Source: Ostrea edulis (Eukaryota). From it: DNA of 64,000 nucleotides. Location of the stretch: contig NC_079170.1 of the NCBI RefSeq assembly GCF_947568905.1, positions 83,638,001 through 83,702,000 on the forward strand. Direction: 5' to 3'. Positions 1,692 to 62,330 of the stretch are shown in pieces. A program made the translations under genes and the position numbers. Position 1 is the stretch's first letter, and each line of letters opens with the position of its first letter. The notes beneath the pieces were generated by a model. That model saw only the letters and a program-made list of their open reading frames with translations. It was not told where the DNA came from and made no database searches.

Positions 1692-2559
1692 AGAAAGTAT
1701 GCCTTAAAACACGTGTATGCATTGAAATGTTTTTGAAAAATATATATCTCCATCACCGAGAACAAATTCCTGTCACTAGATGAGATTGAGAGTTACACGT
1801 AGGAAACGTGACAAAGAAAATTCGGACGAATATTGTGAGATTTTAAATTGTAATCGGAATGTACTAGAGTATACACGTTATACCTTATCAATTGATTAAC
1901 ATTTTTGTATTGTTCTTTTATATGAACAACGTTGACTTTGTTTGATGTGTACAAGATACAGTTCATTTTATGTGCACCATCTCAATCTCTGATGACTGTA
2001 ATACAATACCTTATGACTTTTTTTTTATAGATTATAAACTACAGATACACTCAGGTCGCCCAATATTGGAAAATTCGTCGTCATATATTAATCATATTTT
2101 CCATATTCATCTTAGATACATAAACATTTAAACACGAAAAAGGCTAAACAAAACATGTGCCCGACATGCATATTTTATCAAGGTTGTGTTGAATTTTCGA
2201 TAGGTGTTTAAAAGTATTATTCATTTGAAAACAGTAAAACTACACCCTTACAAAAATAATGTTTTAGCTCTTAATTAGTCCATGGGTATTTTACATGACA
2301 AAGTGAATCATTTTATGCAAGAAAAATTCATTTGCCTATGTTTTTATTCTATACACCGTCGTATTTTAACGATTTGAACTTCAATATTTTATACCTTTTA
2401 CACACAGCTGTTTTTGTTTTTAGAATTACCAATTATGATCAATGCATTTCTTTTGAGTTTTTATCAGAAAAATATGTTATCCGAATTGATGTATCTTTAA
2501 CTGATGACTGCAGATGATGACTATGAATGATGGATGGTAATTCGATTCTTATTTTACAG

Positions 2560-5500
2560 CGTTTACAGCGGTGGTTGACGGGGTATGGGGACCAGCGGGA
2601 GACCCCTTCGACAGAACATATAGAGTGACTGTTAAAAACATATATAGGGTAAGGGCTTTGAAATATTATTTCAAATGACTTTTTCTCCGCACAACATAAA
2701 GGAAGGAGGTGCAAATTATGATGCACGTGAATTATTTCGTTTAATTTGATAATAGTCAAATTTCTGTTTTCGCTTGATAGCAATGCGGTTAAAATGAATT
2801 AGTGCTGTTAAGTATTTTAAGAAATTTTAGTGCACTGAGTGAATACTTAATTTGGACATGGTGTGAAATATAGGTGTTTTCAAATAAAATAAATTTAATA
2901 TATTCTCACCACATCTGTCATTTATTAGCACAACTAAGAAATTAGCAACCTAATGCATGTGTTTGTTTTCGAAGCAAACAAAATACGATTTAAAATTGGG
3001 TTAATGAGTTTACCGTCCACGAACAGATGATTGTTTGAGATATATTGTTTTGTTTGAATTTTTAGGGTTCTGATATTGTCCCGAATACAACTATTACCTT
3101 GTATGGAAGATCACATTCTTGTGGTCCAACAATCCTCGATATAAAGAAGGAGTATGCAATTTATGGTGAGTTCAAATAGGAATCAACAAATATTACCATC
3201 AACATACTATTCCATGTTTCTAGATGCAGTATACCAAGCAGCTTTTTAGATGCTGCAGGGTTTATCATTTGTAAATGATACATACTTTATTTTATAGGTG
3301 TTTGTCTTGAAAAGAAATCTAATATAATAATTTGTGAAATTTTGTAGAAGTATCAGAGGATACTTCTTTAACCATTTCATCAAGCAATTGATATCTCTGC
3401 AAATTCTAGTGTGATTCGAAAAAGTGTCGAAAACGCATAGTGATCAATCTCATAAATCCTATAATGATTTGATTAATGATTTATGTACCGTGAACTTCCC
3501 TGTGATTCAGCAACAAAGTACGGCCCTCGATTGGAAGTTGTCACCCATGAGGAAGTTCCTCCGGCCTCCATCGCCCGACTGAAGATGTACGATTGCTCCT
3601 GTCAGGTAGAAATTCTTACGTGGTTTTAGAGTACATAGGAGAGAATCAATGATTCAAGAACAAATAACGAAAATTTACGTCACAAACTTCACCAATAGCC
3701 AGTCAATATTTAATGTGTTCATTACGTAAAGCACTGTGGTAAACGGTAACCTTCTATATACATTCCCATTCGGAAATTTATGTGTGGTTTGTATGAACAT
3801 GATGGGGTCAAGGCTTATTATATTTTATGAAACGCCAGTCTACCACTGACTTTCATATTTCTATAATCCAAATCAACAGTAAACATAGCAAGAGGTCCAC
3901 AGGCCTGATGGGTATTAATTACAATTTTAGTTTGATTATTAAGTTATTGGTTTAAAAATATAAATAGCCACAAGAGCTATGAAATCTATATTTTCCTATA
4001 GTACATGTATATGTTAGATTCTAGGATTAAGCAACAGTACATAAGACTTTGTATAATAATATATCACCATTTTGGACTCACCCAATAGTGAGGACCTTGG
4101 TGGTGCGAAATTCACAATTTGAGAACATATCATTCCGTTTTTTCTAGTTTTTAAACAGTATCTGCAAAAAGAATATATCTTTCAAATTATAGATGCAAAA
4201 ATCACTGTAAAAAATTTCCTCCAACTTGGAACCAAAGCCCTTGGTCCTGACATCATGAAACTTACAATTACGGAAAAGGGCTACCTGCTTCTTCTAAATA
4301 TCTATTTAAATTAAATTTAGCATTAATTTCATTTAACAAAATATTATCAAAATATTGATCACTGTTCGTTATATTCACCTTGCATATAAGCTTTACCCCG
4401 CCCTCGAATCAGCACCAGTACCTGGGGTCATGAAATTTGCAGCTTTTGGTATAGGCGTTCCTGCTCTACATGACTTTGCATTATCATATTTGAAAAATTG
4501 ATCTTTTTTTTTTTACAGTTCTTACCCCACCCTTAACACCTTGGGGGCAGGTATCTTGTATTCTATAACATATGCCCCATTGTCTCAAAGATGTTTGGAA
4601 CGAGAATTTGGAAACAACTGAATGGGCAGTTATTGAGAAGTTAAAAGTGTTCAATTATTAACGCATGACGAACAGCTGACGACGCACTACGACGGACGCA
4701 AAACAATAGCGATAGATCCCTGTCACGTGACATATAAAGCAAATTATTTTTTCTTTGCATTCCTAACATTTACGAAAGAAATAATTCTTCTTTTGTACTC
4801 CCCACTGTACCAAAAATAATAATTTTCTCATTTCCTTGCCGTATATTATATTCCGATAATGATAAGGTTTTATCGCCTAATGAAGACCAAAATATTACTA
4901 AACGTTGCATTCTACATAAATTACAATCCACTTGCGTTAGTGGTTGATTCGTCTTCTCTAAATTATTTCATATATGTACGGCTGATTATGCAGAGGAATC
5001 TCCATGACTCTCATATCTTGTGTCCGTCTAATAAGTGCATTAATTTACATCCCAGTGGTTTCTCTATCCTCAAAATTAAAAAGTCCTGAATTTTTTTTTG
5101 CTGAAGATGCCTCTTCTGACACTTTTAAGGCTATGATTTAAAGGGGTCATTAGCATTTCCTTCAAACTATCTCGATGATTGATACAACAATGATAAGCAT
5201 CTGAGATGTTGTGATCAATGACGTTGATCGCACATCCTAGATATAATTTTGAAAGATTGAATGAAGTAAAATAAATCAAAGATATATTTTGCGGAAAACA
5301 CTAATTGCTACTTAAAGTATCGCTTTAAAAGTTGATAATTGAAATGTATGAGGAATACTTAAAACATGATTTAATCAAAGTGTCAGAAAGTCAAATGACA
5401 CGGAAACATGTCGGTGAGACTGTGCAGACAGTAATCATCTATTCGAAATCAAAAGAGGGGACCACCGTGATAACGTTAAGTACATCTTTAGTTCAGTTGT

Positions 5501-5890
5501 TCCCAGTCGTAGCTCTAACAGTCAAGAGTAGTTGGTGTATAAATCTGTCTCATCGTTTCCTTTGTGACAACTACTTCATTTCCTGAAATGCTACCCCCAC
5601 CCCCGAGAAAACACAAACGTTTATATAGTGAATTGTCTGTATATTGTGATTGCTTGTGATTTACTAGAAAACTCTTATTTTCTTTTTATTTGCTTCAACA
5701 GATCGAAATTCACAAACCTAATATGTCCAATACATTGAGGTATGAAGATTCATTGGATAAATGTATTATAACCACGCATGGCCGGGACTGCCAATTCAGG
5801 AATGGCTACTGCAAGAAAACAAATAACCTTTGTTCATGGGAACTTTTTCCTCGTGCATACCACAGAACGAACTGTGTCCAGAACGTGTGA
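2560..5890 (+). CDS. TIMP-like / NTR-domain secreted protein, partial (5' exons not located)
   Basis: Phase-consistent exons 2560-2648, 3066-3165, 3511-3605 and 5702-5890, all with AG/GT boundaries. They give AFTAVV...RTYRVTVKNIYRG...SHSCGPTILDIKKEYAIY...YDCSCQ...DKC...DCQFRNGYC...LCSW...NCVQNV*. This matches the TIMP pattern Y.V.V..vyKG / SCG / EY.I.G / YdC.C / C...CxW. A possible upstream microexon lies at 119-136. Confidence 0.75.
3885..4735 (-). mobile_element. Degenerate Helentron-like element in a TIMP-like gene intron
   Basis: Terminus CAAGAGGTCCACAGGCC and (GAC)n/GACGGACG near the other end, resembling the elements above. Confidence 0.45.
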
Positions 5891-11457: not shown

Positions 11458-14400
11458 TTATACAATGGATGGCTCTAGATATTGACAAATGCACTTTCTA
11501 TGAAGATATGTATTATGTCGATTGTACTTAAACTCTTCCAGGGTTATCCAAGAAGCCAGTGCTGTCCGATTCCTATTTATAAAGTTGATGATGAGGTCAT
11601 GTGCTTTTTTCTAAAAAGTAAAAAAAAAAAGAACACTTTAACAACTACCGTCAGTTGGCAAAAATGGGAATGGATAATTATATTACAATATCCGATAGAA
11701 TGCCTTCATTAACTTCCGTGACCCAACACAAGAATTAACGAGGAAATGTTAAGTACGTTAATCACATTTCGTAAATGTGGTCAAAACATTGAAATTAGGT
11801 TTCCAACATGTTTCATCGAAAACCTGAAAACAGCATTCTCTTTTAACATTACCTTAATCGTTTCCTCATCATCATAATGCCGCTTCAGGGCGAATATACA
11901 AAATTTCTGAAAAAATAGTATATAGATATATAAAGCAGAAGGAAACTATAAAAGGACAACAACTTTCGTCCCCCACCCGAGGTTAAACTCACGACCAGTA
12001 AAACCAAAACCTAACAGCGTGTGACCAGCGAGCTAGAGCGCTCGACCATCCAGGCAAATCAAAGTACTGTTTGAAAATAATGGGATTGTCATCACGATGT
12101 CACAGTCTACAAGATGATCAATAATGGAAATAAAATATACTTAAATGTTAAAGGATAGAGCAAGATACACACTATATTTAAGCTATTATATAAAACAAAA
12201 TCAGAGATTGATATGAACTAGATAAACATAACCGTTTTAAGTGAAGGCATATTCAATATAAAGAATAGAGAAATGCACTATATATATTGATACCCACTTA
12301 AGACTTTACCTGGGACCTGTGGAAACAAAGCCTGACAGCAAAGTTGGCAACTTCTTGTTATTTAAGATTTTATTCCCTTCAGAGCATTTCAGTTTATCAT
12401 GTACCCAACAAAACAGAAATGGATTTCACTCCTAATGTTAGTCAATACAGTGTCGACCAAAATTAGTCTTACCTTGCATGGATCTGTATCATAATTTCGT
12501 AGACCGATCTGTCGTAGACAAAGACATATTAGCACATGTGGGATCTTTTTCTATTTCAGAATATTTTCAATAGTTGATCAATGAACTATCGCAATATTGA
12601 AATACTAATTTCCCCACAATGCGGTTTTATTCTATTATGTATCTAAACTTCATTTGACAACAAAATGTATTGTTCATACTTCTCCTGCAATATTCATAAC
12701 TGGCAGGACGTTCAGTGTTTGGAAGTATTGAATCAAATATTGCCAAACAATATCGTCTATTTCTTTCTCTCCCTGCAATATGTCAAATCAAAGAAGGTAG
12801 AAGGAAAACTGATTGAATACAAAATTACATAATTGCAAAAAGTAACCTAGCTCGATTTGATCAACTAAATAAACACTAGCATAAACGCTTACAGAACATT
12901 TATGAATTTTGTGTACTTATTTTCGCGAAGTCAAAATTCAGCGCAATTGGATGATAAACGAACAGTGATTAATCTCATAAATCCAATATGAAAAAGCAAA
13001 ATTGACCGTACGACAAACTCAGACTCACATCAAAGATGGGTTCAGGAGTCTAGGAAGAGTAACATTCCCTACTCACCTATCAGACAAATCATAACCTCTA
13101 TAAACAGGTGAAAATAATGAACAGTGATCAATCTCATAACTCCTATAAGGAATACAAAAACGATTTGAAAAAACACGGACTCCTGGATATGCGGCAGGTG
13201 GGATCAGGTTCTTAGGAGGAATGATTATCCCCTGTCGACCGGCCACAACCGTTGTGAGCCCTATATCTTGTTCAGGTTAACAGAGTAATCCGTAGTCAAA
13301 ATCAGTGTGCCAAGAAGGGTCTAACAATCGTTATAAAATACGTCAGACAGCATTTGATCCAATGATAGGTTGTGTTGGCTGGATCGATATAACGACCATA
13401 GAATTTACATAATACTGACTTTAAACGATACTGTCGAAACCTCTATAACGTCAACGTGTTTGTCAGTAGCCTGCTTAAATCTAAAAACTGATCATACGCA
13501 GAACAAGCTTTTGTGTATCGAGCAGTTGAGAGATATAAACACCATATACAGGTGATAATGGAACATTGCTACATAGATTTAGGAAACTGAAGATGGAGAA
13601 GCTGAAATCATTACGTTTGTCATACTGTTGAGTTGTTAGTCTGCCGTTGATATCTATTTTCAATAAAATATCTAAGTATTAAACTTACCTTTTTGTTATA
13701 CTTAGCGTAACATCCAATAATGATAGTTACTGTGATAATGGGAACAACAATAAGCACCGTACACAATCCCCCCAAACTTCCCTCTGTGATATCACCCTCA
13801 ATGACAAGATATAACAGCAATGGAATCAAAGACATAGATGACGCTCCCAGAACGGCAAAACACCACAGAAGGCGAAAGAATATAGGATCGTGGAGAAAAT
13901 ACCATCTCTTGAATTTGCTGGAATTCACTTCATCTAAGATTTTACAGCACAATGTGTCAATCTGTAAAACGAAAATTTTATCAAATAGTTTTGTTAAGAA
14001 AATACATGAAAGGTGAACATAACGAACAGTGATCAATCTTATAACTCCTATAAGCAAGATAAAGTATAGAGTTGGGAAAACACGGACCCCTCAATATACC
14101 AGCGGTGGGATCAGGTGTAAGCATCCCATGTCTACCAGTGATGTATATCTCAAGCCATTGTTAAATTTCAGATGAATTCATATTTATAGACATTGACTTA
14201 TCAAATAATAAATTCATTTCAACAAGAAGTCAAATTTTGTTTTAGTAATGTTGATTTCTTATGTAACTTTATGTTCGAAAGGTCTAGATTGGTTAGGGGA
14301 AACTAATTCTAGTTGAACCAATTTATCCAGAGCTAAAATAGACAGAGTTTTCGCTACTATTAGCTTACTAAATTTTCAGACAAATAGATGCAAGGTGAAG

Positions 14401-17400
14401 ATAACGAACAATGATCAATCTCATAACTCCTACAAGCAATACAAAATAGATAGTTGGGAAAACACGGACCCCTGGACACACCAGAGGTGGGATCAGGTGC
14501 CTAGGAGGAGTAAGAATATGATGAAAAGAAAAAGTGATCAGAGAAATCAATGAACAATACTTTTGCCCGGACATCACATTAATTTTATTTAGTTGAAGTA
14601 TATTTAGTTGATAAGAATACTGGAATACATTCAGTCACCAACGAAATCATCAGCTATTGTCTTCGTGCTGTTGAATATAAGAAATACTGTGCTATTCACA
14701 GCAGTGATAAACGTTACTAATAGCTGAAATTATGTGCAATGACACTTTAATAATCAATCCAGAATGTTGATGCCAACACGAGAATCCATTAAGGATGGTA
14801 CTGGAGATACCTTATCTTACACGAGAACTTAATGCAAGGTGAAGATAACGAACAGTGATCAATTTCATAACTCCTACAAGCAATACAAAATAGATAGTTG
14901 GGCAAACACAGACCCCTGGACACATCAGAGGTGGGATCAGGTGCCTAGGAGGAGTAAGCATCCCCTGTTGACCGGTCACACCCGCCGTGAGCCCTATATC
15001 CTGATCAGGAAACGGATTTATCCGCAGTCAAAATCAGTGTGCCAAGAACGGCTTAACAATCTGTATGAAACACGTCAGACAGCATTTGACCCAATGTGAG
15101 GTTGTATTGACGAACTAGATCGTTATAACGACCATAGAATTTGCGAAATGCTGACTTCAATCGAGACTGTTGAATCCCTGTACCATCAACTCGATTTAAA
15201 AACTGACTATACCTAGAACAAGCTCTTGCATATCGAATCAATTGAGATATATAAACACCATATGCAGGTGATGATGGAATATTGTTACATAAATATGGGA
15301 AGTTGACGATGGAGAAGCTGAAATCATCCCGTTTGTCATACAGTTGAGTTGTCAGTTTGCCGTTAATTTCTACTTTCAATAAAATATTTAAGTATGAAGC
15401 AGAAGTGGACGACTCTGTGGTGTCCTTTATTTCGAGCTCACAGGGATATATCAAATCGACATATGAATGAAAGCTATCATTGTTAATAGACAAAACGTCA
15501 TCGATATATCTAAAAGTCGAATTGAAGGTCACAGCGAGAGATTTTTTCTTCTCACGTAGAAGTTTTTGAATAAATTCTGTTTCATATGAATATAAAAACA
15601 GGTCAGCTAACAAAGGAGCACAATTCGTGCCCATGGGAATTCCAACAGACTGTTGGAAGACCTGATCACCAAAGACCACGAAGATATTGTCAATGAGGAA
15701 CTCTAGCATATTTTTTATTTCAACTTCAGAGTACTTGTGCGTGGAATCAGAGTGGTGTTTAACAAAGTAAGTTTTTGAATGACTGATCACTAGATATGAA
15801 TATTTCCGTTTTCCGTTTTTGTTGAAGGAGCAACTGTCTATGATGTCAAAAAGTCTAGTCTTTAATTTATCGTGAGGAATGGTCGTGTATAGTGTTGAAA
15901 AGTCAAAGGTTTTAATAATAATAATAATATAATAATAAAAGTACACTTATATAGCGCCTTATCTAAAAATACTCTAAAGCGCTGTACAACATACTAAAAT
16001 TTACAATTGATAATTAAAAGAAAAACCATAGAATACACAACGAATAATTCTTACACATATAAGCTATAATGCTATTGATTTGGGAAAAATTCTGTGATTT
16101 CAAGTTTACTAAAAGTTCTTTAGAACTTTTTAGAATGCACATTTGATTAACACCACTTCTGGCATATGTAGTCGCACAGTAAGTTTGAAGTTTCTCCTTC
16201 ACAGCTGTTAACATTTTCGTGAGGAGCAAAGCTATGGCGAAATGACTCGTGAACGTCGAATCATGAGAATAACAGTTGAGCAAGTGTTTACATATAATTT
16301 AGGTATATGAATATGAAAACTAGTAATTTTAATTCGCGAGTGAATATTCTCGCAAAATTACGCGATAATAAATTATTCGTGTATATTTAGGAATTTGCGA
16401 CATCCTACATAGCATTAATTAATCAAATATGTAACTGCATTACATCAGAAATAAATGCAATCATATCATGCATGTATATAACAACCTTTTGGGATCTAAG
16501 TTGATCTGATATATTCGAACGCTTATCTGTGTCTTCTGAAAAAGTGATTTTTGGAATACCATAGTCCCACACTTTAATCCTCCGTATAACACGTAATACG
16601 GATCCGTTACGTAATCCTATAGAAAATACGGAGAGAAACATCATTTGTGTATGTAAGATAATACATGTAACTATATACAGATAACAACGGTATACTCTAC
16701 ATTACAAAGACACCAACACGACTGGGAAAATAAGAGATATAATTAAAGTCTAACCTTGAAAGGAGATTACGTTTGGTAAAATGCATGTGTCAGACGCTGA
16801 AAAAGAGAGAAACTTCGTTAAATTTTGATCTGTAAACTATTTTTGAATATTTTAAAACAACTTTTAAGTTTAGACTGCTAGTCAAGGATGATAAGATAAA
16901 GATACCAAACAGTTATCAATATCGTGAATCCTATACAGTCTACAAAATTCAGAGTAGGGCTAACACGAATACCTGATCATCCCAGAGGTTGGATCAAGTA
17001 TATAATAGAAGGATTAAGCATACCCTGTCATCTAGTCACACCCATCGTAAGATCTATGTCTTGATCGGACAAACAGAGCAATCCGTAGTCACAATCAGTG
17101 TGCACAGTACGGTCTCAATTAGTATGAAACATATCAGAGAGTATTTGACTAAATGACAGGTTGTATTGGTAAATCCGATCGTTATGACGTCTATAAAATT
17201 TGCAAAATTCTGAATTTAAACGAGAATGTTGAAACCACTGTACATAACATCAACTTATGGGTTAGTAGCCTTCCTCCATTTAAAATACTGACATATACAG
17301 AACACACTCTTGCGTATCCAATCATATATTACATCACATATTAGTCTGACGTGTTTCATACCAATTGTTAAGCCGTTCTTGGCACACTGAGTTTACCTGC

Positions 17401-18133
17401 GGATAACTACATTTACCTGATCAGGATATAGGGCTCACGGCGGGTGTGACCGGTCAACAGGGGATGCTTACTCCTCCTAGGCACCTGATCCCACCTCTGG
17501 TGTGTCCAGGGGCCCGTGTTTGCCGAACAATCTATTTTGTATTGCTTGTAGGAGTTATGAGATTGATCACTGTTCGTTATCTTTACCTTGCATTAGTGGG
17601 ATGAGATGTTTCTAATTGCGCAGGTACGGGCCACGCGCCGGAGGTACTCCGTGCATTGATCTAGAACCAAAAGTGAAAGTTAAGGTATGATAGTATACTC
17701 TACCTCCAAAAACACAGGCTTCGTGTATTTTACTGGCGATATCTGTTCCATCAATTGTTGCATCAACATAGTTAATGGTTTGTAATTCTCTCGGCATTTC
17801 TGTTTTCTCAAGTAAAACTGGAATCATGCTATTCTCGCACTGTTTATGTGAAGCCGTGATTCCATATAAAATTTCAGAACTGCACCACTGATTTTGTTTA
17901 AAACTTTCGGATACAAGATAGACAATTTTCATGCTTTTTTCGATACCATTTAGAATATTGTCCATCACTGTAACCCCAGGAGTGAAGTCTCTCACGTGAC
18001 ATAGACATTTCAGTTGATATTTTTCTTCTAACTCATTTAACAACGAGAGTGCAACTTCCTCATCCTCATGACAAAACGATAAAAATATCTGATAGTTTTT
18101 TCCGTATGGAAGTGGAATTGGTGTTATATCCAT
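11458..18133 (-). CDS. TIR-domain protein with two transmembrane helices and a Cys/His-rich C-terminal domain (403 aa, 7 exons)
   Basis: Exons 18133-17704, 16616-16486, 13961-13689, 12772-12680, 12550-12473, 11906-11853 and 11610-11458 join in frame (1212 nt). TIR motifs: YQIFLSFCHED, LKCLCHVRDFTPG, IEKSMKIVYLVSESF, WCSSEI, IPVLLE. There are two hydrophobic segments in exon 3, and the C-terminus carries CLCLRQ and RH..LHRKCICQY. Exon 2 has a weak donor (GTTGTT) and is the least certain. Confidence 0.8.
11968..12056 (-). mobile_element. tRNA-derived SINE head
   Basis: Degenerate A- and B-box on the minus strand, with no complete cloverleaf. A similar head is at ~30755-30820. Confidence 0.4.
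13110..13680 (-). mobile_element. Degenerate Naiad-like PLE 3' fragment in a TIR-gene intron
   Basis: KIDINGRLTTQQYDKRNDFSFSIF (ORF 13481-13663) plus the terminus. Confidence 0.75.
14832..16240 (-). mobile_element. 5'-truncated Penelope-like retroelement (Naiad-like), RT plus 3' terminus, interrupted
   Basis: RT motifs KTFDFSTLYTTIPH, QSVGIPMGTNCAPLLADLFLY and FRYIDDVL. The ORF ends HTDC* with no downstream GIY-YIG domain. A ~260-bp 3' end finishes ...TTATCTTCACCTTGCAT. It is split by an insertion at 15917-16066. Confidence 0.85.
15917..16066 (-). mobile_element. 5'-truncated LINE/SINE 3' tail with (ATT)n, nested in the PLE RT
   Basis: The minus strand reads TGTACAGCGCTTTAGAG...AAGGCGCTATATAAG...(ATT)n. 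It is flanked by TAAT at 15913-15916 and 16067-16070, and removing it restores QINSI-KTFDF. A related tail is at ~51055-51120. Confidence 0.65.
16880..17593. mobile_element. Two Naiad-like 3' fragments in inverted arrangement (old minus copy ~16880-17300, younger plus copy 17342-17593)
   Basis: Both match the family 3' region. The plus copy ends ...CTTTACCTTGCAT. Confidence 0.7.
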
Positions 18134-18333
18134 GGTAAATACTGGTTCAGGTTTACCTAGGACCCCTCTTCTAAACAATGTTTAAGGTACACACATTACC
18201 TTATGGAATAAATCCAATATATTACGTGGAATTATAAATAGAAGTGTTGGGTATCTGGAATTTCCAAGTTCTAATTCCGTATACCTTCCTATTGTGACTG
18301 GGAATTTTATAAAACTAAAACGGAGATTTGAAT
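18134..18333. promoter_or_regulatory. Putative bidirectional promoter with a kB-like site
   Basis: 200 bp separate two divergent ATGs. TGGAATTTCC sits at 18256-18265 and a degenerate GGGAATTTTA at 18300-18309. Confidence 0.45.
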
Positions 18334-21300
18334 ATGTTAGTCCTGAAAGTTATCCACACCTTAATGTTTGGAATATTTGCTTTCTTCTATACTGGAAATT
18401 GTGAGGTATGTAACCTAAACTTAAAGTCGATTAATTTGTATGTTAAACATGCATTCACTAATTATTTTTTTTCATATTGCATGGTCTTTATCATAAATAA
18501 TAGGATTTAGAAAAGATGACATACTGCGATCATTTCATTGCTTAGAGATAACAATCGTTTTTGTAGTTTGTTTTTTTACGCATTTCATATCTAAAAATAC
18601 TTGTCTTTATAATTGCATGTACCATTCTAAATTTAAATATCAGATTCCAAATAATTTTTAAATCTAAAATTAGCGCTTTTGAATTAACAAGAAGTTCACG
18701 GGTATGCATACATGTACATATATGAATATCTGGTTATTTAGCCCACTCTTACATGTAGATTCGAATGTACTATTACATCTTAAAGATATAGAACTCAAAA
18801 TACAGGGTATCCAGGTTAGCGGATGTACAAACAATAAACCAAATGATACAAAATTTTACTCTCTATTCTAACATATTCATACATAAACATGACCTTTGCA
18901 AATTTAAAGGTATCAATATCCTATATTTAAGGTAACGTATTGTTATTTCTTTTAAAGGTCTCGTCTAGTACATTTAAATGTAAGTTTCCAAAAGGAATTT
19001 TCAATGGAGTGTGTGTTTTCTGTCCAGCAGAAACATTATATGAATTGACATGGAATTTGGGATACAAATATTTGCCTCAATATTGGTATCAACCGGTAAC
19101 ACATTTAACTTTCCATTCCAATCACAATTGTGTTAGAACATGTTCTCAGGAGAAACCGTTCATATCCAGAAGACAGTGTGTATCAAACTGTCCAGGAAAA
19201 TCGAGTCAGACCGGGAATACAAAATACTGCAAAGAAGAAGGTCTGAATGATGGCTTCTGTGACGTCAACAACTGTCCACTCCCCAAATACAAATGCTATT
19301 ATATGCAATGTTTTAGAAAATGTCCAGCCTTTACTGTTGCCTACAATAATAGTTGCGTAATTGAGTGTTTCAATGATAAACCGTTCATTCTTCATAACAA
19401 CTGTGTACGGCAGTGTCGGGAGCAGGACGTGATTGAAAACGGAGTTTGTCGCAAGAACTGTTCGATCGATCACTTTTTGTCTGGCAGATATTGTGTTGAT
19501 AAATGTCCAGAAAACCAACCCTATATCGATGGCGAACGTTGCCTTTCAGAATGCCCACATTTTAAAAAGATTCAAGATAACAGATGTGTAAAAAGTTGTT
19601 CTCATGATCGTTTCCTTGCTGGGAGAGTTTGCTTTAAACGATGCCCCTCTGGACTCTATGAACACAAACATGGTTGTGTTGCATCTTGTCCCAACAATGT
19701 ATTATTGGAGAACCAAACATGTGTTTACAATTGTTCTAACGGGCTTCTTGTTTCGGATTCAAAATGTGTAGCAGCATGTCCATCTGGACATTTCGTCTAT
19801 GGATCTGAAAGCATATGTACAAAAACATGCGATGGTTTTACATTTTATAACAACAGCATGGCGTTTTGTTTACAAAAATGTCCTGAAGGAACAGCTCGAA
19901 GGAATCAAACTTGCGTGAATAGTTGCCCAAGAAGTCGACCATTCCTACATGCAGAATCATGTCTTACTAAATGTCCGAATTCATCTAGATATGTTTTAAG
20001 AAATATAGGTCCACTCGATAAGTTATTTTTCAGATGCACAGAAAGTTGTCCAAAATACGTCTCTTTGGTAAGCAACATGTGCATTGATTCTTGTTCCCTG
20101 GGTGAAGTATTATTCCGTAATATATGTCAATCACAATGTCCTTTGTCGGACCCTTACCCTGTCCATGTACCAGCAACAGACAGATATCATATAGATTTCA
20201 CAACATCATATGACATTCAAAAACCAATATCTGCGCTAGTGATGTGTGCTGAGGAATGTCCATTTAATTTTGTGTTGGATAATAATGAATGCTTTGCTGA
20301 CTGTCCAAATTCATCAAAAATCATGGTATATAATGAAACGTGTTTTAGCGAGTGTCCTTTCCATCATCCCTTCATCGTTTCAAACGGTACCAGGAAAACT
20401 TGTGTCAGTGAATGTGACAAACAACATTTTCAAATGCATTGTGTGAATAAATGTCCAGAACCGCATAGATTTCTGCTTAATAAGGAATGTGTCAACTGCA
20501 AAGAAAAAGGATTGTACGAAGATGGCAACACGTGTGTGGAAGCATGCGAGTTTCTTCATTACGACGATCGATGCTATTATGTTTGTCCCCAAGAAGTGCA
20601 ATTTGTTTTCAATGGAACTTGTTCCAGATCTTGCCCCGTAAGTCTACCCATGGTAGATGAACAGGTACATAAAGGACATATAGTTTCAGTATGTGTCCAC
20701 GGCTGTCCGAAAGATAAGTTTATTTTTGGAAACCACTGCGTATCCAGTTGCCCCCAAAACAAAAGATTTCCAATGAATAATAGATGTATGTCCTGTCAGG
20801 ACATTGGAAAATATGATGATGGATCTAAATGTGTAGATGTATGCCCCGAGTTACATCAAAACTTTCACTGCGTATATAGTTGCCCAGATTTAAAGGTTTA
20901 CAAAAATACATGTGTGCGGGATTGCCCAACCAGTGCACCTTTCACAACAGATCGGAATTACATAACGTATTGTGTTACACATTGCTCAGAGGGTTTATAT
21001 ATTTACAATGACAGGTGTGTGTCTTCTTGCCCATATGGAAGTAATGTTCTATCAAACAACACTTGCGTACAGAAATGTCCCCGAAATGCCCCATTCACAC
21101 AGAAATTAGGTGGTGTAACGCTAGAATGCTTGAAACGTTGCAAACAAAATCATTACCAACATGGTTTTACGTGTTTAGAACGATGTCCAGATGGATATTA
21201 TGTATATAAAAGTAAGTGTGTTCAAACCTGTCCACAGGACGCCCCTTATATGTACAATAAATCGTGTGTCAGTACATGTTGGTCCTTAAAGCTAGGAATG

Positions 21301-23925
21301 AATTGCTATGATAAATGCCCTTCAGGAAATTATCGATTTGAAGATAGGTGCGTTTTGAGTTGTCCACTTGGAGTCCCGTACAAATATCAAGGAGAATGTG
21401 TTCAGACCTGTCACAATTATACAATAAACATGAATTGTTATGATCAATGCCCTGCTGGATTAATAGGATATAAGAAAAAGTGCATCCTGGAATGTCCAAA
21501 AGAAGCAATGTTTTATCATAACGGTGAATGCCTATGTAAGTGTCCAAATGACACAATTGTAATCAAAACAACATGTTACGATTCTTGTCCAGGTGGAAAG
21601 TATGAATATCAACGGAAATGTATCGAAAAGTGTCCCAAACGTGCTCCATATATTGAAGAAAAAAAATGCGTACAGTCCTGTACAATCTTAACAGATGGAT
21701 TCCGCTGTTATGACCAATGTCCCAGTCGGAAATACAGTTTCCGAGGAAAGTGTGTCAATAAATGTCCTCCGGAGGCTGCTTTTATGAATGGAAAATCATG
21801 TGTAGCAGCATGCCCTCTTTACCATGATGGAAATTTATTTTGCATAAAGAAATGTCCACAAAATTATGTTCCACATGGAAAGGAATGTAAAGATGAATGC
21901 CCAAATGATTCACCATTTTACGCTTTCACATTTCTAAGCGAAAAACGATGCACGAAAAAATGTTCCGCGTTTGAGTTAGCAGCGGAGAACAAAAGTTGTA
22001 TCTTGCAGGACAAATGTTCTGGCTTTAGAGACGGTATGTGGTGTCTAAGCAAATGTCATTTGCACAATTTTATTCTTCGGTCTGAGGATAAAAAGTACTG
22101 TCATCCATTGGTACCCGTTTATATTGCCCTCATCATCTTAACTGTGGCAGTGATTATCAGCATAGCCTTTGGGATGAGAATTATATGTCACTGTTATCAT
22201 AATCGACAGGTAAGACACACTTATTATTTCTAATTTCCCTGTGGATGATAATTGAATGTATTTTTGCTTTTGTTGTTATTTACAAATATGAAGCTTGAGT
22301 TAATGATTATTTCCACAGATAAGTATCTTAAATTCTTTACCACTTACGAATGGTGGTAATTAAATTAATGTTGTTTATGAGACATAGTCATTTATTGTAA
22401 AATCGATTTACTGAGATATTTTATTGACGATAGACACTAACGGCAAACAAACAACTCGACTTTGTAATAAATGGGATGAGTTCATTCTCTCCTTCTTCAA
22501 CTTTCCATATTTATGTAGCAATATTCCATTATCACCAACGTATGGTGTATATATATCTCAACAGATTCGATACGCAAGAGATTGTTATGTGTATGATCAA
22601 TTCTAAATCGAGGAAGGCAACTGACAAAGCTGACGGTGTAGGGGTTTCAACAGTCTCCTTTAAAATCAATGTATCGCAAATTATATGGTCATTATAACAA
22701 TCTAGTTTGCCAATACAATTTATCATTGGCTCAAATGCTGTCTGCCGTGTTTTATACCGATTGTTTGGCAGTTTTTCGCACACTGATGTTGACTACGGAT
22801 GTCTCCGTTTCCCTGATTAAGATATAGGCTCAGGGCGGGTGTGACCGGTCGACAAGGGATGCTTACTCCTCCTAGACAACTGATCCCACCTCTGGTATAT
22901 CCAGGGGTCCGTACACGTGTTTGCCTAACACTAATTTGCATTCCTTATAGGAGTTATAAGATTGATCACTGTTTTTTGTCTTCTCCTTTCATTCAAAGGA
23001 TGAATTTGACTCCACTTTTTGACAATCTGTTTTTCCTTATAATAGCTCTAGCAAGTTTATTGTTATTTCGGATTTCAAACATTTCGGTTGAGCATCACTG
23101 AAGAGACATTATTTGTCGAAATGCGTATCTGGTGCATCAAAATTGGTATCATATAAGTTTTACATTACGACTCTTGGGTCCAGGCTTCTGCTGGTGGACT
23201 GTTAGTCCCCGGGGGTCTCTACAGCCCAGTAGCTAAGTACTTCGTTACTACCTTGAAAATACGGATGTATATTTAATTGCTGTGATAAAATTTAGAAATT
23301 CATTTCAAAACTAAGGATTATCTCCTTCATGCATAGCTCTTATCTTTAGACGAATTTGACTCCACTTTTTTAGCACTCTGTTTTGCCTACAAAAGCTCTA
23401 GCAAGTTTATTGTTATTTCGTATTTCAAACATTTCGGTAGAGCATCACTGAAGAGACATTATCTGTCGAAATGTGCATCTGGTGCATCAAAATTGGTACC
23501 GTATAAGTTTTAGATGTAGATATTTTTTTTCCACTTACACTCTGCACAAACTGGCATAAAGCGGGATCCCATTTAGAATGCAAGGTGAAGATAACGAACA
23601 GTGATCAATCTCATAACTATTTCTATTAATCTGAGGTAAAGGATACTCAGGAGACTGATTTGGTCTAATCTCAACACAGCTTAGTTCGAAAGTAGAGAGA
23701 GTTTAAAATATGCAATTGCTTGCACGAGCATATCCATATTAATTAGGAGTAATATGATATTTTTACATATTTATATGAATAAAATGTTGCTACTTTTGAA
23801 TGATTATTTCAGTTCCTTTATATAATCTTTTATATACTTTATTTCAGGTAGAGAATAAAGATAAATATCAAACGCTAGCAGATGAAAACAACGATAAATT
23901 CGATGAAGATATCGCCCTCATTTAA
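18334..23925 (+). CDS. Large furin-like cysteine-rich-repeat type I membrane protein (~1133 aa), no protease domain
   Basis: Signal-peptide exon 18334-18405 (MLVLKVIHTLMFGIFAFFYTGNCE|GTATGT). A 3252-nt exon 18958-22209 holds dozens of CxxxCP repeats and the TM segment VYIALIILTVAVIISIAFGM, ending CAG|GTAAGA. Probable last exon 23848-23925 (VENKDKYQTLADENNDKFDEDIALI*). All junctions are phase 0. Confidence 0.85.
22424..22990 (+). mobile_element. Degenerate Naiad-like PLE 3' fragment in an intron of the Cys-rich gene
   Basis: DTNGKQTTRLCNKWDEF...YGVYISQQIRYARDC plus the terminus. Confidence 0.75.
22997..23512 (+). ncRNA. Retrozyme copy, ~1.5 units, two hammerheads
   Basis: Same unit as at 39352. 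Hammerheads at 23092-23135 (stem III ATGCGTAT) and 23442-23485 (ATGTGCAT), 350 bp apart. Confidence 0.8.
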
Positions 23926-29821: not shown

Positions 29822-32800
29822 TCCGTGAGTGGCTTAATTACGGCCTTTGAGCAGTGGGTTCCGATGATGAATATTTCATAATCGTATCCTATTATAAATG
29901 GTATACCTTTATTTTAGGATCATATATTACAAAATAGACAAGATAAGCACACACAATCTTTTTCATTTTCTAATTTTGCGCATATATAGTCATCATGGCT
30001 AATTGTCTTCTCAATGGCATAGAGGCAATTAAATATAATGTGATCTGCTGTCCTGATAGAAATTCTTTCCGATTAAATGAACCACAACCTATCATATCCT
30101 TTGAGGCAACATAAGCATCGAACATACACTGATGCTTCCGACTTGGCCCCCACCAAAATGACAATATGACACTTCCTACAAAATCAATAAATAATATTGA
30201 TTTTAAGAGAATTACCAAGATGAATATATGCAAGCATATCAAAATCTTATGTCCCATCTAAAATGTATTACTTGTTCTCCCCATGTCATCTACATCTACT
30301 ACTACATGTAGCTGTAATATGTATTCCTTAAATTATATGTTTGAATGAAATCTTATTCAAACCCTTTTCTTACGGTAGGCAATAACTTACTTAAATACAT
30401 GTATTCTTATCTAGATTTAGTTTCATCTAAACTCTAAGGTGATTATATGACCTCAATTAATCAACACATGGGTTAATTATAATATTCAAAACAGTGAGAA
30501 TTGTTTTGCGGTATTTTATCACTTGATGACTTATGCGACGTTTCTCAATAATATATATAATTTCACGAATATGCACTCTATCTCGTTTCTACAAAAAAAA
30601 AATCTTGGGGTACGTCGTATTACCATGTCTGTTTTAGAGATAGCATACTAGTACTCAGTATTTTGATAGTTTCTAATATTGTTGCAATCAAAAGTTATGT
30701 ATTACATCAGGTTGTATATATAAGGACAGTACAAATATATTTTAGCAAAGAATGGATCAAATCTAGGACCCCTGCATTACAAGATAGGTTATCTAATCGC
30801 TAAGCTACCCAGGCCGGTAAAATTTGAATTTATTTCCGAAATCATACGATAGCTTTTTATATCAAGAAGATGGGAAAAAAATCAATGTCAGAAATGTTGC
30901 TTGTATGTCCTTAATAAATGCTTTTGTTTTGCTAGTGGCATGTGTAAAATGAAAACAAAATCAACCTGAACAAAAAAGAAAAAAAAAAACAGAGTAAATT
31001 CCCATGTATAACATGCATAGTCTAAGGTGTATCAGTATTGGTATTTCTACAATATTTAAATTCTGTTTAATTAATTGAATTTATTCATAGAATTTATAAT
31101 TTTTTAAAGTATCATCAAAAGTAAATAATAATTAATACGTGGATGTCTAATAATACTGAATAGTGTCCCCACCTCAATTCACTTCTCAGTTGAGTATCTG
31201 TACATGTATACGATTGTGCATTTATTATCTCAATTCCATCCTAGTCATACGATCCCTAACGGAATAAAGTGTGCTGCATTAGGCCTAAGTAGATCTAAGT
31301 ACTGTAATGTGTGACGCCACAGTCTACATTTTGACGTCATATCAATACAACTGAAGCAGTGGCGAGTTGAAGGGTGAATATTTAGCACGCACGCACATCA
31401 TATGTGCCATGCTATTGGCAGATCTAGAGAAATCCATAATTGTACACAATGTCTATGAAAACTTTTGACATCAAATGATTGTGATCAAGTTGATTAATTC
31501 TAGGTGTGTGAATGGAGTTCAAAGTAAATAGAATAATTACCTGTATTACTAGAACGCTGGTACTCGGAGATATGTCTCTCACACCTTTTTTCGTGTGGGT
31601 GAGTGGAGAGAATATTTTGAATGCCACATGTCTTCGTCTAAACTTCTGTCAGCATGCAGTAAGTCATTATCCCGCCATATTATATGTGTTTCTATGTAAT
31701 TTCCCTGCCTTATCACGTTGAAGAGTTTCAAAGGGGAATAACTCTTGCTTACAGAATGCATTTCCCCCCATAAATCATTCACTTCAAATTGTATGAAATA
31801 GGCAGATTCCCAAAAGTTTTAGTTTAGATTTATGAAGAACATAGATTAGTTGTTTTAAAAACTTGTGTCACTTTACTTGAGGTGGATGCGAATAAAAGAT
31901 ATTAAGACATAACAAACATTGAATTTAAACACAATTTTACAGATTTCTTCAATTATAAAAATCACTTAGGATTGTCCATTATTCATTTTTTTTCTTAAAT
32001 GACAAATATGGGATCTGTTTTATAATTTAATATGAAAATTAGAATTTTAAGACTATTCATAATCTTTTATATTCAAATTTTGTGCCAAAACTACCAAATT
32101 CTAGAAAATGGCCAAACTTGATAAAATTGTACCTGTTTCCATAGCAACCATGATCACTATTTAATTTTTAAATATGTTTTCTTGAATATGTTATATAGAT
32201 GTTTCATTCAGGTGAGTTTCGTGAAAATCGGTGACTATGCGTGCCGAATTTTTTTAAGTGGTTACAGAGAATGGCTCTTAAAGACATTGACTCTAGTGAA
32301 AAGGATTCCATGCTACACAACATGTTGTGAATTGGACTTGAACCTTCTTCACTAAAGAACATCAGTAGATACCTGTTTGATAGACTTGCTCAAGTATCTT
32401 TGTTTAATAATCAGTGCTCTCTTTAATACTTTTGTTCCACAGAGTGATTATAATTCGAAAGTTCCAGTTCTTATCGGAACCAATCTACTAGGTATCATTA
32501 TAGAAACCACAAAGGATATGTGTGGATACTAGTTCCTACAGAAAGCAGACATGCATACTCCATGGTACCTATCCATGAGATGTTAGTGATGCGTGAAAGA
32601 AAACTTTCCAAGAATAGGAACATACTGACTTTCATCAAATCAGCAGAGAATAGGAAAATTGCCATACCTGCAAATAGTGAAGTTGTGATCAATGGTTACT
32701 TTGACAAGAAAGTTCTGTATGAACCAGTATGTGCAATTGTACAACCAACATCTTCATCGTTCATTCCAGATGACTTGGATCTTTTGCCTACTTTGGTGAC

Positions 32801-54623: not shown

Positions 54624-54680
<57 letters not shown>

Positions 54681-61562: not shown

Positions 61563-62330
61563 TTTCGGTATGTGAAGCACAATCTCCCAGGGTCTGGCAT
61601 CAGTACAGAGAAATTTAACTCGGACCTGGAGGGCTGTCTCTGCAAGGAATGTCAAAACAACTGTCCATGTGTTCAGCGATTCGGGAAAAACTACTCGGAA
61701 GACGGCAAACTCTTAACCAAATACCTCTGTGGAGAGGAAAGCAAAGCAATAGTCGAGTGCAACAGTAACTGCCAATGTTCAAATAAGTGTGAAAACAGGA
61801 ATGTCCAGTATGGTGTCCGGGTACAACTGGAGCTCTTCTGTGTGGCAAACAAGGGATTGGGGGTCATAACTCTCGAAGACCTAAAACCAGGGATGTTTGT
61901 GTGTGAATATGCAGGGGAAGTACTCTCGTACGAAGAGGCCCAGAAACGGACCCTCGCTCAAGGGAAAGAAGACATGAATTACATTATAACTGTCAATGAA
62001 CACTGTAAGAGTGGGGTAATAAAAACATATGTGGATCCTCGATACTTTGGCAACATTGGTCGATTTTTAAATCACAGTTGTGATCCTAATTTGACGATGC
62101 TCCCAATTCGAGTGAACAATGAAATTCCCTTGTTGTGTTTGTTTGCCAACAGAGAAATATGTATTGGAGAAGAGTTGACTTTTCATTATGGACTCCCCAG
62201 TGAAACAGACAGTAGATTCCATTGTCATTTGGAAGATGACACAGATTTACTGCCGTGTCACTGTGGTGCACAAGCATGTACTGGTTATCTGCCCTTTGAT
62301 GAGAGTTTATTCATGAATGTGAAGAGCTAG
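61563..62330 (+). CDS. SETMAR: SETMAR-like histone-lysine N-methyltransferase (pre-SET/SET/post-SET only, no transposase), main exon
   Basis: Acceptor ttttcag|TTT. Pre-SET GCLCKECQNNCPC...ECNSNCQCSNKCENRNVQ; SET motifs GLGV, FVCEYAGEV, RFLNHSCDPN, ELTFHYG; post-SET CHCGAQACTGYLP; stop at 62330. A possible first exon is 60790-60834 (MEDHYTHPNIDILWM|GTAGTA), low confidence. Confidence 0.85.
   Translation, partial: FRYVKHNLPGSGISTEKFNSDLEGCLCKECQNNCPCVQRFGKNYSEDGKLLTKYLCGEESKAIVECNSNCQCSNKCENRNVQYGVRVQLELFCVANKGLGVITLEDLKPGMFVCEYAGEVLSYEEAQKRTLAQGKEDMNYIITVNEHCKSGVIKTYVDPRYFGNIGRFLNHSCDPNLTMLPIRVNNEIPLLCLFANREICIGEELTFHYGLPSETDSRFHCHLEDDTDLLPCHCGAQACTGYLPFDESLFMNVKS

What the first reader, a model, noticed from the sequence alone, without database searches (positions are those of the whole stretch)
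11458..23925. Head-to-head pair: membrane TIR protein with no ectodomain plus giant Cys-rich receptor with almost no cytoplasmic domain - possible split immune receptor
Seen: the TIR-2TM gene (minus, ATG 18133) and the Cys-rich type I membrane gene (plus, ATG 18334) diverge from only 200 bp, in a window where most other spacing is kilobases of repeats. The architectures are complementary. One has a cytosolic TIR but only an ~8-residue external loop. The other has ~1040 aa of ectodomain but only a ~33-aa tail. Established analogies: head-to-head paired plant NLRs (RRS1/RPS4) and the split LRR + TIR receptors of Hydra. Inference: a co-regulated sensor/signalling pair using furin-like repeats instead of LRRs. 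I know of no description of this pairing.
Basis: partly seen in the sequence, partly recalled or inferred. Interest (0 to 1): 0.9.

Follow-up and report, generated by a model that had tools for sequence, protein, structure and literature searches.

The report
Conserved oyster TIR–receptor gene pair
Two flat-oyster genes that start 200 bases apart on opposite strands, one encoding a huge cysteine-rich surface protein with almost no inner tail and the other a membrane-anchored TIR signalling protein with almost no outer part, also sit back-to-back in clams, an abalone and a chiton, which makes them a strong but untested candidate for a two-part immune receptor.

Summary
The window is Ostrea edulis chromosome OX387710.1. 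On the minus strand an 8-exon gene (CDS 18133→11458, 403 aa) encodes an N-terminal TIR domain, a two-helix membrane hairpin and a cytosolic domain. On the plus strand a 3-exon gene (18334→23925, 1133 aa) encodes a signal peptide, about 1050 aa of furin-like Cys repeats, one TM helix and a 36-aa tail. The ATGs are 200 bp apart.

The same divergent pairing occurs in Magallana gigas, Crassostrea virginica, two Saccostrea species, a paralogous pair on another O. edulis chromosome, Mya, Mercenaria, the abalone Haliotis and the chiton Liolophura. That is 10 of the 11 loci inspected, the window included. One scallop locus lacked it.

New here: the non-TIR part of the TIR protein has the DUF4481/TMEM268 fold. 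Human and mouse TMEM268 is reported to bind the C-terminal regions of type-I receptors (integrins).

Physical interaction, co-expression and an immune role remain untested. I found no paper describing the pairing.

First readers of this scan noted the same TIR–TMEM268 architecture and head-to-head module on other DNA of this genome (s1-279146, s1-279153). I reached both results independently.

The parts
17704..18133 (-). TIR gene exon 1. ATG at 18133. Encodes the whole TIR domain (aa 1-143), with the box-2 motif RDFTPG.
   Evidence: Pfam TIR_2 5e-19 and TIR 2e-15. The closest solved TIRs are TLR6, TLR1, TLR2, TIRAP and Hydra TRR-2. Exon limits come from splicing that gives 403 aa.
16755..16796 (-). 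TIR gene exon 2 (linker, aa 144-157).
   Evidence: Homologous to 'ANESCILPNVIPFQ' of the M. gigas protein. Low pLDDT in the AF2 model.
16486..16616 (-). TIR gene exon 3. Encodes the beta-hairpin that begins the DUF4481-like module (aa 158-201).
   Evidence: tblastn with P0002 and P0024, splice model, strands 164-185 in the AF2 model.
13689..13961 (-). TIR gene exon 4. A 273-nt phase 0-0 cassette that encodes the LNSS motif and both TM helices (aa 202-292).
   Evidence: Conserved in all oyster orthologues but absent from C. gigas isoform X3 (P0002). A homologous hairpin exon is present in Mya.
12680..12772 (-). TIR gene exon 5 (cytosolic part of the DUF4481-like module).
12473..12508 (-). TIR gene exon 6, carrying the conserved YDTxxCK motif.
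11853..11906 (-). TIR gene exon 7.
11458..11610 (-). TIR gene exon 8 with the stop codon. Carries the RHNT...KKCxCQ motif. H, C and C are invariant in 21 mollusc sequences.
18134..18333 (.). 200-bp space between the two ATGs. It is a putative bidirectional promoter and must also hold both 5'UTRs.
   Evidence: Signal-peptide mini-exons lie 115-200 bp from the TIR ATG in four other oysters. The annotated gap in Mya is 110 bp.
18257..18265 (.). GGAATTTCC, a kappaB-like palindromic 9-mer.
   Evidence: The same 9-mer lies 70 bp upstream of the C. virginica TIR ATG, and GGATATTCC lies 83 bp upstream in M. gigas. The background is 2 per 64 kb in the window. The motif was chosen after looking, so this is a lead only.
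18233..18240 (+). TATAAATA, a TATA-like element about 95 bp upstream of the plus-strand ATG.
   Evidence: Read directly from the sequence. Its function is inferred.
18334..18405 (+). Cys-rich gene exon 1, the signal peptide MLVLKVIHTLMFGIFAFFYTGNCE. Donor is GTATGT, phase 0.
18958..22209 (+). Cys-rich gene exon 2. Encodes about 1050 aa of furin-like repeats, the TM helix (aa about 1076-1097) and the juxtamembrane RIICHCYHNRQ.
   Evidence: Pfam Furin-like 83 bits against a cut-off of 26.8. Cys spacing and TM prediction. Exact reconstruction of P0025.
23848..23925 (+). Cys-rich gene exon 3. Encodes the end of the cytoplasmic tail, finishing ...DEDIALI (acidic dileucine-like).
   Evidence: Similar tail endings occur in the Mya, Haliotis and Mercenaria homologues.

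Best explanation
This is an ancient, mollusc-wide two-gene module. The two genes are transcribed divergently, in oysters from a very short shared control region.

Gene 1 encodes a type-I membrane glycoprotein. Its rod-like ectodomain of about 60 furin-like two-cysteine units would bind a ligand. Its 36-aa tail has no signalling domain and ends in an acidic dileucine-like sorting motif.

Gene 2 encodes a protein with no ectodomain. It has a TLR/MyD88-type TIR domain joined to a DUF4481 (TMEM268-like) module. That module consists of two adjacent TM helices embedded in a cytosolic alpha/beta domain.

The most likely working model is a split receptor. The DUF4481 module docks onto the TM helix or tail of the Cys-rich partner, much as TMEM268 binds the C-terminal regions of integrin beta4 and CD11b. 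Ligand-driven clustering of the ectodomains then brings the TIR domains together. The TIR domains recruit MyD88-type adaptors, or alternatively titrate them.

Shown here: gene structures, domain identities, the DUF4481-like fold, and conservation of the pairing.

Inferred: a shared promoter, physical association, ligand sensing, and TIR-dependent (probably NF-kappaB/Rel) output.
For: The divergent pair is present in:
- O. edulis, in the window
- a paralogous O. edulis pair on chromosome OX387706, whose TIR gene is 72% identical to the family member P0110
- S. echinata and S. cucullata
- M. gigas
- C. virginica
- Mya arenaria, with the ATGs 110 bp apart and a TM-hairpin exon
- Mercenaria
- Haliotis asinina
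- the chiton Liolophura

Outside oysters no other flanking gene is shared, so the pair itself is what is retained.

All TIR partners belong to one family. That family is defined by the non-TIR module: 66 representatives match the profile, and all 10 long ones scanned carry an N-terminal TIR domain.

That module folds confidently (pLDDT 90, pTM 0.81). It matches TMEM268/DUF4481 by Foldseek (E 6e-5, probability 1.0), by language-model features (0.85-0.86, 186-191 shared features) and by shape (TM 0.59).

TMEM268 binds the C-terminal regions of ITGB4 and CD11b and protects them from degradation. For CD11b this is endosome-lysosome degradation, and for ITGB4 it is ubiquitin-mediated (PMC6748091, PMC11169502).

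The TIR domain keeps the RDFxPG BB-loop and is closest to TLR1/2/6, TIRAP, MyD88 and Hydra TRR-2.

The partners all have a single TM helix and tails of 27-121 aa without any Pfam domain.
Against: - There are no expression, TSS or interaction data.
- The intergenic distance is not conserved. It ranges from 110 bp to 8 kb, and a retrotransposon sits in the abalone spacer. A strictly shared core promoter is therefore not universal.
- Proximal promoter sequence does not align between oysters.
- The TM and juxtamembrane segment of the Cys-rich protein is no more conserved than its ectodomain (38-50% against 44-46%). There is therefore no sequence sign of a constrained docking surface.
- One scallop Cys-rich paralogue has no TIR gene within 10 kb.
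- The C. virginica Cys-rich copy at the orthologous locus is uncalled and split, and may be decaying.
- The DUF4481 assignment rests on predicted folds. Pfam itself gives only E = 0.13 for one of 21 members.
Confidence: 0.5

Rival explanations
1. The two genes are a co-regulated neighbour pair that do not touch each other. They are kept together by a shared bidirectional promoter or enhancers because both are needed in the same cells or conditions. Each works with other partners.
For: Very short ATG-ATG spacing in oysters and Mya. A kappaB-like 9-mer in the spacer of three oysters. No elevated conservation of the Cys-rich TM and tail.
Against: The pair survives where the spacer has grown to 7-8 kb and taken up a retrotransposon, so promoter sharing alone does not explain its retention. 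The complementary topologies and the TMEM268 precedent for receptor binding fit a direct partnership better.
Confidence: 0.25
2. The TIR-DUF4481 protein is not a signal transducer. It is a TMEM268-like stabiliser or trafficking regulator of the Cys-rich receptor, with the TIR domain acting as a decoy or brake on TLR/MyD88 signalling. SIGIRR and the amphioxus TIR-only adaptors bbtTIRA and bbtTIRC work in that way.
For: TMEM268's known role is to protect partner receptors from degradation. The Cys-rich tails end in acidic dileucine-like sorting motifs. Amphioxus TIR-only adaptors are negative regulators and are NF-kappaB targets (PMC6043800).
Against: The TIR domain keeps the RDFxPG BB-loop that is typical of signalling-competent TLR TIRs. 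Nothing in the sequence marks it as inhibitory.
Confidence: 0.2
3. The adjacency is a historical accident between two expanded gene families and has no functional meaning.
For: TIR genes and Cys-rich repeat genes are both numerous in bivalves. One scallop locus lacks the pairing.
Against: Ten of the 11 loci inspected (window included), from nine species in three mollusc classes, keep the same two families in the same divergent orientation. Other neighbours are not kept.
Confidence: 0.03

Closest known systems
Hydra split Toll-like receptor (HyLRR-2 plus HyTRR-1/2)
   Same: The ligand-binding ectodomain and the TIR domain are on separate membrane proteins, and the TIR chain has almost no ectodomain. 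The oyster TIR matches the solved Hydra TRR-2 TIR at E 7e-10. Function is described in PMC6043800 and PMC6321704.
   Different: The ectodomain is made of furin-like Cys repeats, not LRRs. The TIR chain has an N-terminal TIR and a two-helix DUF4481 hairpin instead of one TM helix with a C-terminal TIR. The two genes are conserved head-to-head neighbours, which as far as I know is not reported for the Hydra genes.
TMEM268 (DUF4481, PF14800) and its integrin partners
   Same: It has the same predicted fold as the non-TIR module: two adjacent TM helices with a tiny loop inside a cytosolic alpha/beta domain. TMEM268 binds the C-terminal regions of type-I receptors (ITGB4, CD11b) and controls their degradation.
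   Different: Vertebrate TMEM268 has no TIR domain. Its partners are integrins, not furin-like repeat proteins. Sequence similarity is near the detection limit (Pfam E 0.13 in one of 21 members).
Head-to-head paired plant NLRs (RRS1/RPS4, RGA4/RGA5)
   Same: They are divergently transcribed sensor and executor immune genes that are inherited and duplicated as a unit. One member carries a TIR domain (RPS4/RRS1).
   Different: The plant pairs are cytosolic NLRs, not membrane proteins, and have no homology outside the TIR domain. Physical pairing is proven in plants and untested here. This comparison is from general knowledge.
DAP12 / FcR-gamma type adaptor-receptor pairs
   Same: A ligand-binding type-I receptor with a short tail relies on a separate membrane adaptor that has a minimal ectodomain.
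   Different: Those pairs dock through charged TM residues and signal by ITAMs. I saw no charged residues in the TM helix of the Cys-rich protein, and signalling here would go through TIR. This comparison is from general knowledge.
Canonical Toll-like receptors
   Same: The TIR domain is of TLR type, with best PDB matches to TLR6, TLR1 and TLR2.
   Different: There is no LRR ectodomain, the TIR is N-terminal, and there are two TM helices. NCBI's label 'toll-like receptor 6, partial' for the Saccostrea orthologue reflects the TIR domain alone.
PCSK5 / furin Cys-rich domain and the EGFR or insulin-receptor furin-like region (PF00757)
   Same: The same repeat type is present, 83 bits against a cut-off of 26.8.
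   Different: There is no subtilisin or P domain and no kinase. The protein is almost entirely repeats plus one TM helix, so the name 'PCSK5-like' is misleading.

Membership tests
TIR domain proteins (PF01582 / PF13676) | TIR fold with box 1, box 2 (RDxxPG) and the alphaC Glu | tested here: met
   TIR_2 69 bits and TIR 58 bits, both above their cut-offs. RDFTPG and WCSSE are present. The AF2 model superposes on MyD88 and TLR TIRs at about 2 A rmsd.
Canonical Toll-like receptor | LRR ectodomain, single TM helix and C-terminal TIR in one chain | tested here: not met
   No LRR hit. The TIR domain is at residues 1-143, there are two TM helices, and there is no signal peptide.
DUF4481 / TMEM268 (PF14800) | Significant match to the Pfam model | tested here: inconclusive
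   Only one of 21 family members reaches E = 0.13. The Atlas reports PF14800 on 13% of the members of one mollusc TIR cluster.
DUF4481 / TMEM268 (PF14800) | Fold: two adjacent TM helices with a minimal loop, flanked by cytosolic beta-hairpins and helices | tested here: met
   The model has pLDDT 90 and pTM 0.81. Foldseek hits TMEM268 entries at E 6e-5 to 2e-3 with probability 1.0. The Atlas shape search hits a DUF4481 cluster at TM 0.59. The feature search puts DUF4481/TMEM268 on top. No solved structure exists for comparison.
Furin-like cysteine-rich repeat proteins (PF00757) | Match above the gathering score and regular Cys spacing | tested here: met
   83 bits against 26.8. The protein has 130 Cys with alternating spacings of 4 and 11-12 residues.
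Proprotein convertase PCSK5 (the NCBI name of P0025) | Subtilisin (Peptidase_S8) catalytic domain and P domain | tested here: not met
   The Pfam scan of the full 1133-aa protein finds Furin-like only.
Split TLR-like receptor (Hydra type) | Separate ectodomain-only and TIR-only membrane chains | tested here: met
Split TLR-like receptor (Hydra type) | The two chains cooperate physically or functionally to signal | not testable with these tools
   This needs co-IP, reporter assays or a multimer co-fold. None of these was available.
Head-to-head paired immune receptor genes | Divergent orientation with a short spacer, retained across species and paralogues | tested here: met
   Ten of the 11 loci inspected, window included. 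The ATG-ATG gap is 110-200 bp in oysters and Mya.
Bidirectional promoter pair | Transcription start sites less than 1 kb apart and co-expression | not testable with these tools
   Only CDS coordinates are known. No TSS or RNA-seq data were accessible.

The most novel reading that the evidence does not exclude
Molluscs possess an ancient two-chain pattern-recognition receptor that runs parallel to TLRs. It predates the chiton/conchiferan split. A furin-like-repeat ectodomain chain senses ligands. A TIR-DUF4481 chain, encoded next door, docks to it in the membrane and signals through TIR. By extension, DUF4481/TMEM268 would be a general 'receptor-docking' membrane module, and that would explain what the orphan human protein TMEM268 does with integrins.
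Probability: 0.35. Interest if true: 0.9.

Novelty: new variant of a known kind. Interest (0 to 1): 0.78.

Why it matters
Bivalve immunity is known for huge expansions of TIR genes, and the upstream receptors of most of them are unknown. A gene pair kept head-to-head from chitons to oysters gives a concrete partner for one whole TIR family. It also suggests that non-LRR, furin-like repeat ectodomains can feed TIR signalling. The hypothesis can be tested directly with two cDNAs and a reporter assay. It would also give the poorly understood DUF4481/TMEM268 module a general role as a membrane adaptor for type-I receptors. O. edulis and M. gigas are farmed species hit by Bonamia, OsHV-1 and Vibrio, so a new receptor class is of practical interest for resistance breeding.

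Tried and rejected
- A brute-force enumeration of splice sites timed out. I replaced it with motif-anchored splicing.
- The C. gigas isoform P0002 has no gene on record, so its context could not be fetched. I used P0064 instead.
- Gerdol et al. 2017, the reference catalogue of bivalve TIR architectures, is not held. I therefore cannot exclude that it lists this architecture.
- Searches for the LOC identifiers, for 'TIR domain + furin-like + mollusc' and for 'TIR domain + head-to-head + bivalve' found nothing.
- Alignment of the proximal promoters of five oysters gave no convincing conserved block. Only the kappaB-like 9-mer recurs, and it was chosen after looking.
- I tested whether the TM and juxtamembrane region of the Cys-rich protein is more conserved than its ectodomain. 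It is not.
- The PDB sequence search with the Cys-rich protein found nothing. PDB Foldseek with the DUF4481-like model found nothing below E = 1.
- The Pfam scan of the non-TIR module gave only noise plus DUF4481 at E = 0.13.
- Fold search with the full-length model returned TIR hits only, so I modelled the non-TIR part separately.
- I considered an NADase-type TIR. The invariant Glu (WCxxE) is also present in non-enzymatic TLR TIRs, so it does not discriminate between the two.
- I considered that the TM exon might be a mis-annotation. I rejected this because it is conserved in all oysters and in Mya, a gastropod and a chiton.

Full report
**Identity of the window.** The Cys-rich ORF is 100% identical to the NCBI protein 'proprotein convertase subtilisin/kexin type 5-like [Ostrea edulis]' (P0025, 1133 aa). 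That protein maps to chromosome OX387710.1 of assembly GCA_947568905.1. The gene calls there are a TIR gene of 403 aa on the minus strand and the 1133-aa gene on the plus strand.

**Gene structures.**
- *TIR gene.* Eight exons are 18133-17704, 16796-16755, 16616-16486, 13961-13689, 12772-12680, 12508-12473, 11906-11853 and 11610-11458. Splicing them gives an open 403-aa reading frame, which matches the annotated length.
- *Cys-rich gene.* Exons 18334-18405 (signal peptide), 18958-22209 and 23848-23925 reproduce P0025 exactly.
- *Spacer.* The ATGs are separated by 18134-18333, which is 200 bp.
- *Introns.* The introns of both genes hold retrotransposon debris. One example is an RVT_1 fragment at 15053-15946.

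**The two proteins.**
- *TIR protein.* It starts directly with a TIR domain (Pfam TIR_2 5e-19, TIR 2e-15). The closest solved relatives are the TIRs of TLR6, TLR1, TLR2, TIRAP, Hydra TRR-2, the oyster TIR-STING and MyD88. The RDFxPG BB-loop is kept. After a disordered linker come a beta-hairpin and two long hydrophobic helices. The helices lie at about 232-256 and 266-290 by hydropathy and are joined by 4-10 residues. A cytosolic domain of about 110 aa follows, with an invariant C...RH-x7-C-x-C signature.
- *Cys-rich protein.* It has 130 cysteines with spacings that alternate between 4 and 11-12 residues, 41 CxxxCP motifs and 17 N-glycosylation sequons. It has one TM helix at about 1076-1097 and a 36-aa tail that ends DEDIALI. 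Pfam sees only Furin-like (83 bits against a cut-off of 26.8). No protease domain is present, so the NCBI name is a misnomer.

Ten of the 11 loci inspected, counting the window itself, carry the divergent pair.

| Species (locus) | Result |
|---|---|
| Saccostrea echinata (L002), S. cucullata (L003) | The big Cys-rich exon lies upstream of the TIR gene, on the opposite strand |
| Magallana gigas (L008) | A 1020-aa furin-like gene is the divergent neighbour of the TIR gene |
| Crassostrea virginica (L009) | The Cys-rich ORF is present in the same position. It is not called as a gene and is split into two pieces |
| O. edulis, chromosome OX387706.1 (L004) | A distant paralogue (P0050, 28% identity) is also the divergent neighbour of a TIR gene. 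That TIR is 72% identical to family member P0110 |
| Mya arenaria (L006) | CDS starts are 110 bp apart. The TIR gene contains a homologous two-helix exon |
| Mercenaria mercenaria (L007) | CDS starts are 1.8 kb apart |
| Haliotis asinina, abalone (L010) | An 835-aa furin-like gene is divergent from the TIR gene. The 7-kb spacer holds a non-LTR retrotransposon |
| Liolophura sinensis, chiton (L011) | An 855-aa Furin-like/GF_recep_IV gene is divergent from the TIR gene, 8 kb away |
| Mizuhopecten yessoensis, scallop (L005) | A Cys-rich paralogue with no TIR gene within 10 kb. This is the only negative |

Outside the oysters, nothing else in the flanks is shared with the window apart from repeats. 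Within oysters, a third small gene downstream of the TIR gene is also syntenic. So the pair itself has been retained since before chitons, gastropods and bivalves diverged. It was also duplicated as a unit at least once. The A-type and B-type TIR genes form separate clades.

**How tight is the arrangement?** Some annotations place the Cys-rich start 1.8-3.6 kb from the TIR ATG. I nevertheless found signal-peptide-like mini-exons with consensus donors, all in phase 0, within 115-200 bp of the TIR ATG:

| Species | Position | Gap to TIR ATG |
|---|---|---|
| S. echinata | 6579 | 195 bp |
| S. cucullata | 9819 | 181 bp |
| M. gigas | 9875 | 125 bp |
| C. virginica | 9886 | about 115 bp |

In both Saccostrea species the big exon begins at a strong phase-0 acceptor, with a junction homologous to the O. 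edulis one. The compact head-to-head layout therefore looks general in oysters and is annotated in Mya. In the abalone and the chiton the spacer is much longer.

The O. edulis spacer contains a TATA-like TATAAATA (18233-18240) and a kappaB-like GGAATTTCC (18257-18265). The same 9-mer lies 70 bp from the TIR ATG in C. virginica, and GGATATTCC lies 83 bp away in M. gigas. The background is 2 copies in the 64-kb window. The motif was picked after looking, and the promoters do not otherwise align. I treat it as a lead only.

**What the TIR partner is.**
- A profile of the non-TIR part (linker, hairpin and C-terminal domain) finds 66 representative proteins. All 10 long ones scanned carry an N-terminal TIR domain.
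- The long ones looked up by name come from oysters, Pinctada, Mytilus, Mizuhopecten, Mercenaria, the gastropods Gigantopelta and Haliotis, and a chiton.
- An AF2 model of this part alone is confident (pLDDT 90, pTM 0.81).
- Foldseek against AlphaFold DB clusters returns mollusc TIR proteins and an entry named 'TIRB'. It then returns several 'Transmembrane protein 268' entries (E 6e-5 to 2e-3, probability 1.0).
- The language-model feature search ranks DUF4481/TMEM268 clusters first (0.85-0.86, with 186-191 shared features).
- The Atlas shape search finds a DUF4481 cluster (TM 0.59) and a chordate TIR cluster (TM 0.57).
- Pfam itself barely sees the relationship (E 0.13 in one of 21 members). 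No solved structure exists.

I conclude that the protein is a fusion of a TIR domain with a DUF4481 (TMEM268-like) module. Membership is met at fold level and inconclusive at sequence level.

This matters mechanistically. Human TMEM268 has two adjacent TM helices inside DUF4481. Through its TM and C-terminal part it binds the C-terminal region of integrin beta4 and stabilises it (PMC6748091). Mouse TMEM268 binds the C-terminus of CD11b and prevents its endosome-lysosome degradation (PMC11169502).

**Most likely mechanism.** The furin-like-repeat protein is the ligand-binding chain. The TIR-DUF4481 protein is its membrane adaptor, docked through the hairpin or the cytosolic domain to the partner's TM helix or short tail. 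Clustering would then bring the TIR domains together for MyD88-type signalling. The acidic dileucine-like tail endings suggest that the receptor chain cycles through endosomes. Examples are DEDIALI here, DEDALL in Mya and EDVPLL in Haliotis and Mercenaria.

- Functional coupling of some kind: about 0.8.
- The specific split-receptor model: about 0.5.

Rival readings are co-regulation without contact, a TMEM268-like stabiliser or TIR decoy role, and chance adjacency. The last is now very unlikely.

Points against the model are listed in the structured fields. The main ones are the absence of any expression or interaction data and the lack of extra conservation of the Cys-rich TM and juxtamembrane segment.

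**Comparison with what is known.** In function the module resembles the Hydra HyLRR-2/HyTRR split receptor. In genomic layout it resembles head-to-head plant NLR pairs, and in logic it resembles DAP12-type adaptor pairs. It is not a canonical TLR and not a proprotein convertase.

I found no paper describing the architecture or the pairing. The key catalogue of bivalve TIR proteins (Gerdol et al. 2017) could not be read.

After my analysis I found two earlier notes of this scan on other DNA of the same genome. One is a TIR-TMEM268 architecture note with a follow-up (s1-279146). The other is a first-reader note on a duplicated head-to-head module (s1-279153). They agree with my results. They are AI notes and do not count as independent evidence.

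**Verdict.** I class it as a new variant of a known kind, the split or paired immune receptor.

Noticed in passing
window 13689-13961 (-); P0002: The exon that encodes both TM helices is a 273-nt phase 0-0 cassette. C. gigas isoform X3 (319 aa) skips exactly this exon, which would give a soluble TIR protein with a broken DUF4481 module. O. edulis isoform X2 (P0070, 339 aa) instead has an alternative 3' end after exon 6.
   Followed up: partly
L009:4955-8587 (-): In C. virginica the Cys-rich partner next to TIR gene P0065 is not called as a gene. It aligns in two pieces separated by about 500 bp, with no long ORF across the break. It may be a decaying copy or may hold an extra intron.
   Followed up: partly
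window 2550-5881 (+): Four short coding blocks are conserved with a 191-192-aa gene that lies downstream of the TIR gene in M. gigas (L008) and C. virginica (L009). This is a third syntenic gene within oysters. It has no Pfam match.
   Followed up: partly
window 15053-15946 (-), 13481-13663 (-), 22424-22606 (+): Reverse-transcriptase fragments and related '...GVYISQLIRYAR...' pieces of one retroelement family lie in introns of both genes of the pair.
   Followed up: no
window 32520-35020 (+): A run of pol-like ORFs has reverse-transcriptase and integrase-type motifs. By eye it is probably an LTR retrotransposon. I ran no family search on it.
   Followed up: no
window 51800-55550: Long, highly repetitive low-complexity arrays give fake ORFs (HTCT..., LSLS...). 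They show extreme GC skew, +0.67 then -0.42.
   Followed up: no
window 61572-62330 (+): A single ORF encodes Pre-SET plus SET domains, a histone-lysine methyltransferase-like exon.
   Followed up: partly
L010:7299-9924 (-): In Haliotis a non-LTR retrotransposon (endonuclease/RT ORFs) sits in the spacer between the two genes. It accounts for much of the 7-kb distance.
   Followed up: no
AlphaFold DB A0A0A0UEG1 'TIRB'; Atlas chordate TIR cluster: TIR plus DUF4481-like proteins seem to exist outside molluscs, possibly in amphioxus (that attribution is from memory and the organism was not shown). Whether they also have a furin-like neighbour could not be checked.
   Followed up: no
This hints at more pairs.
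   Followed up: no
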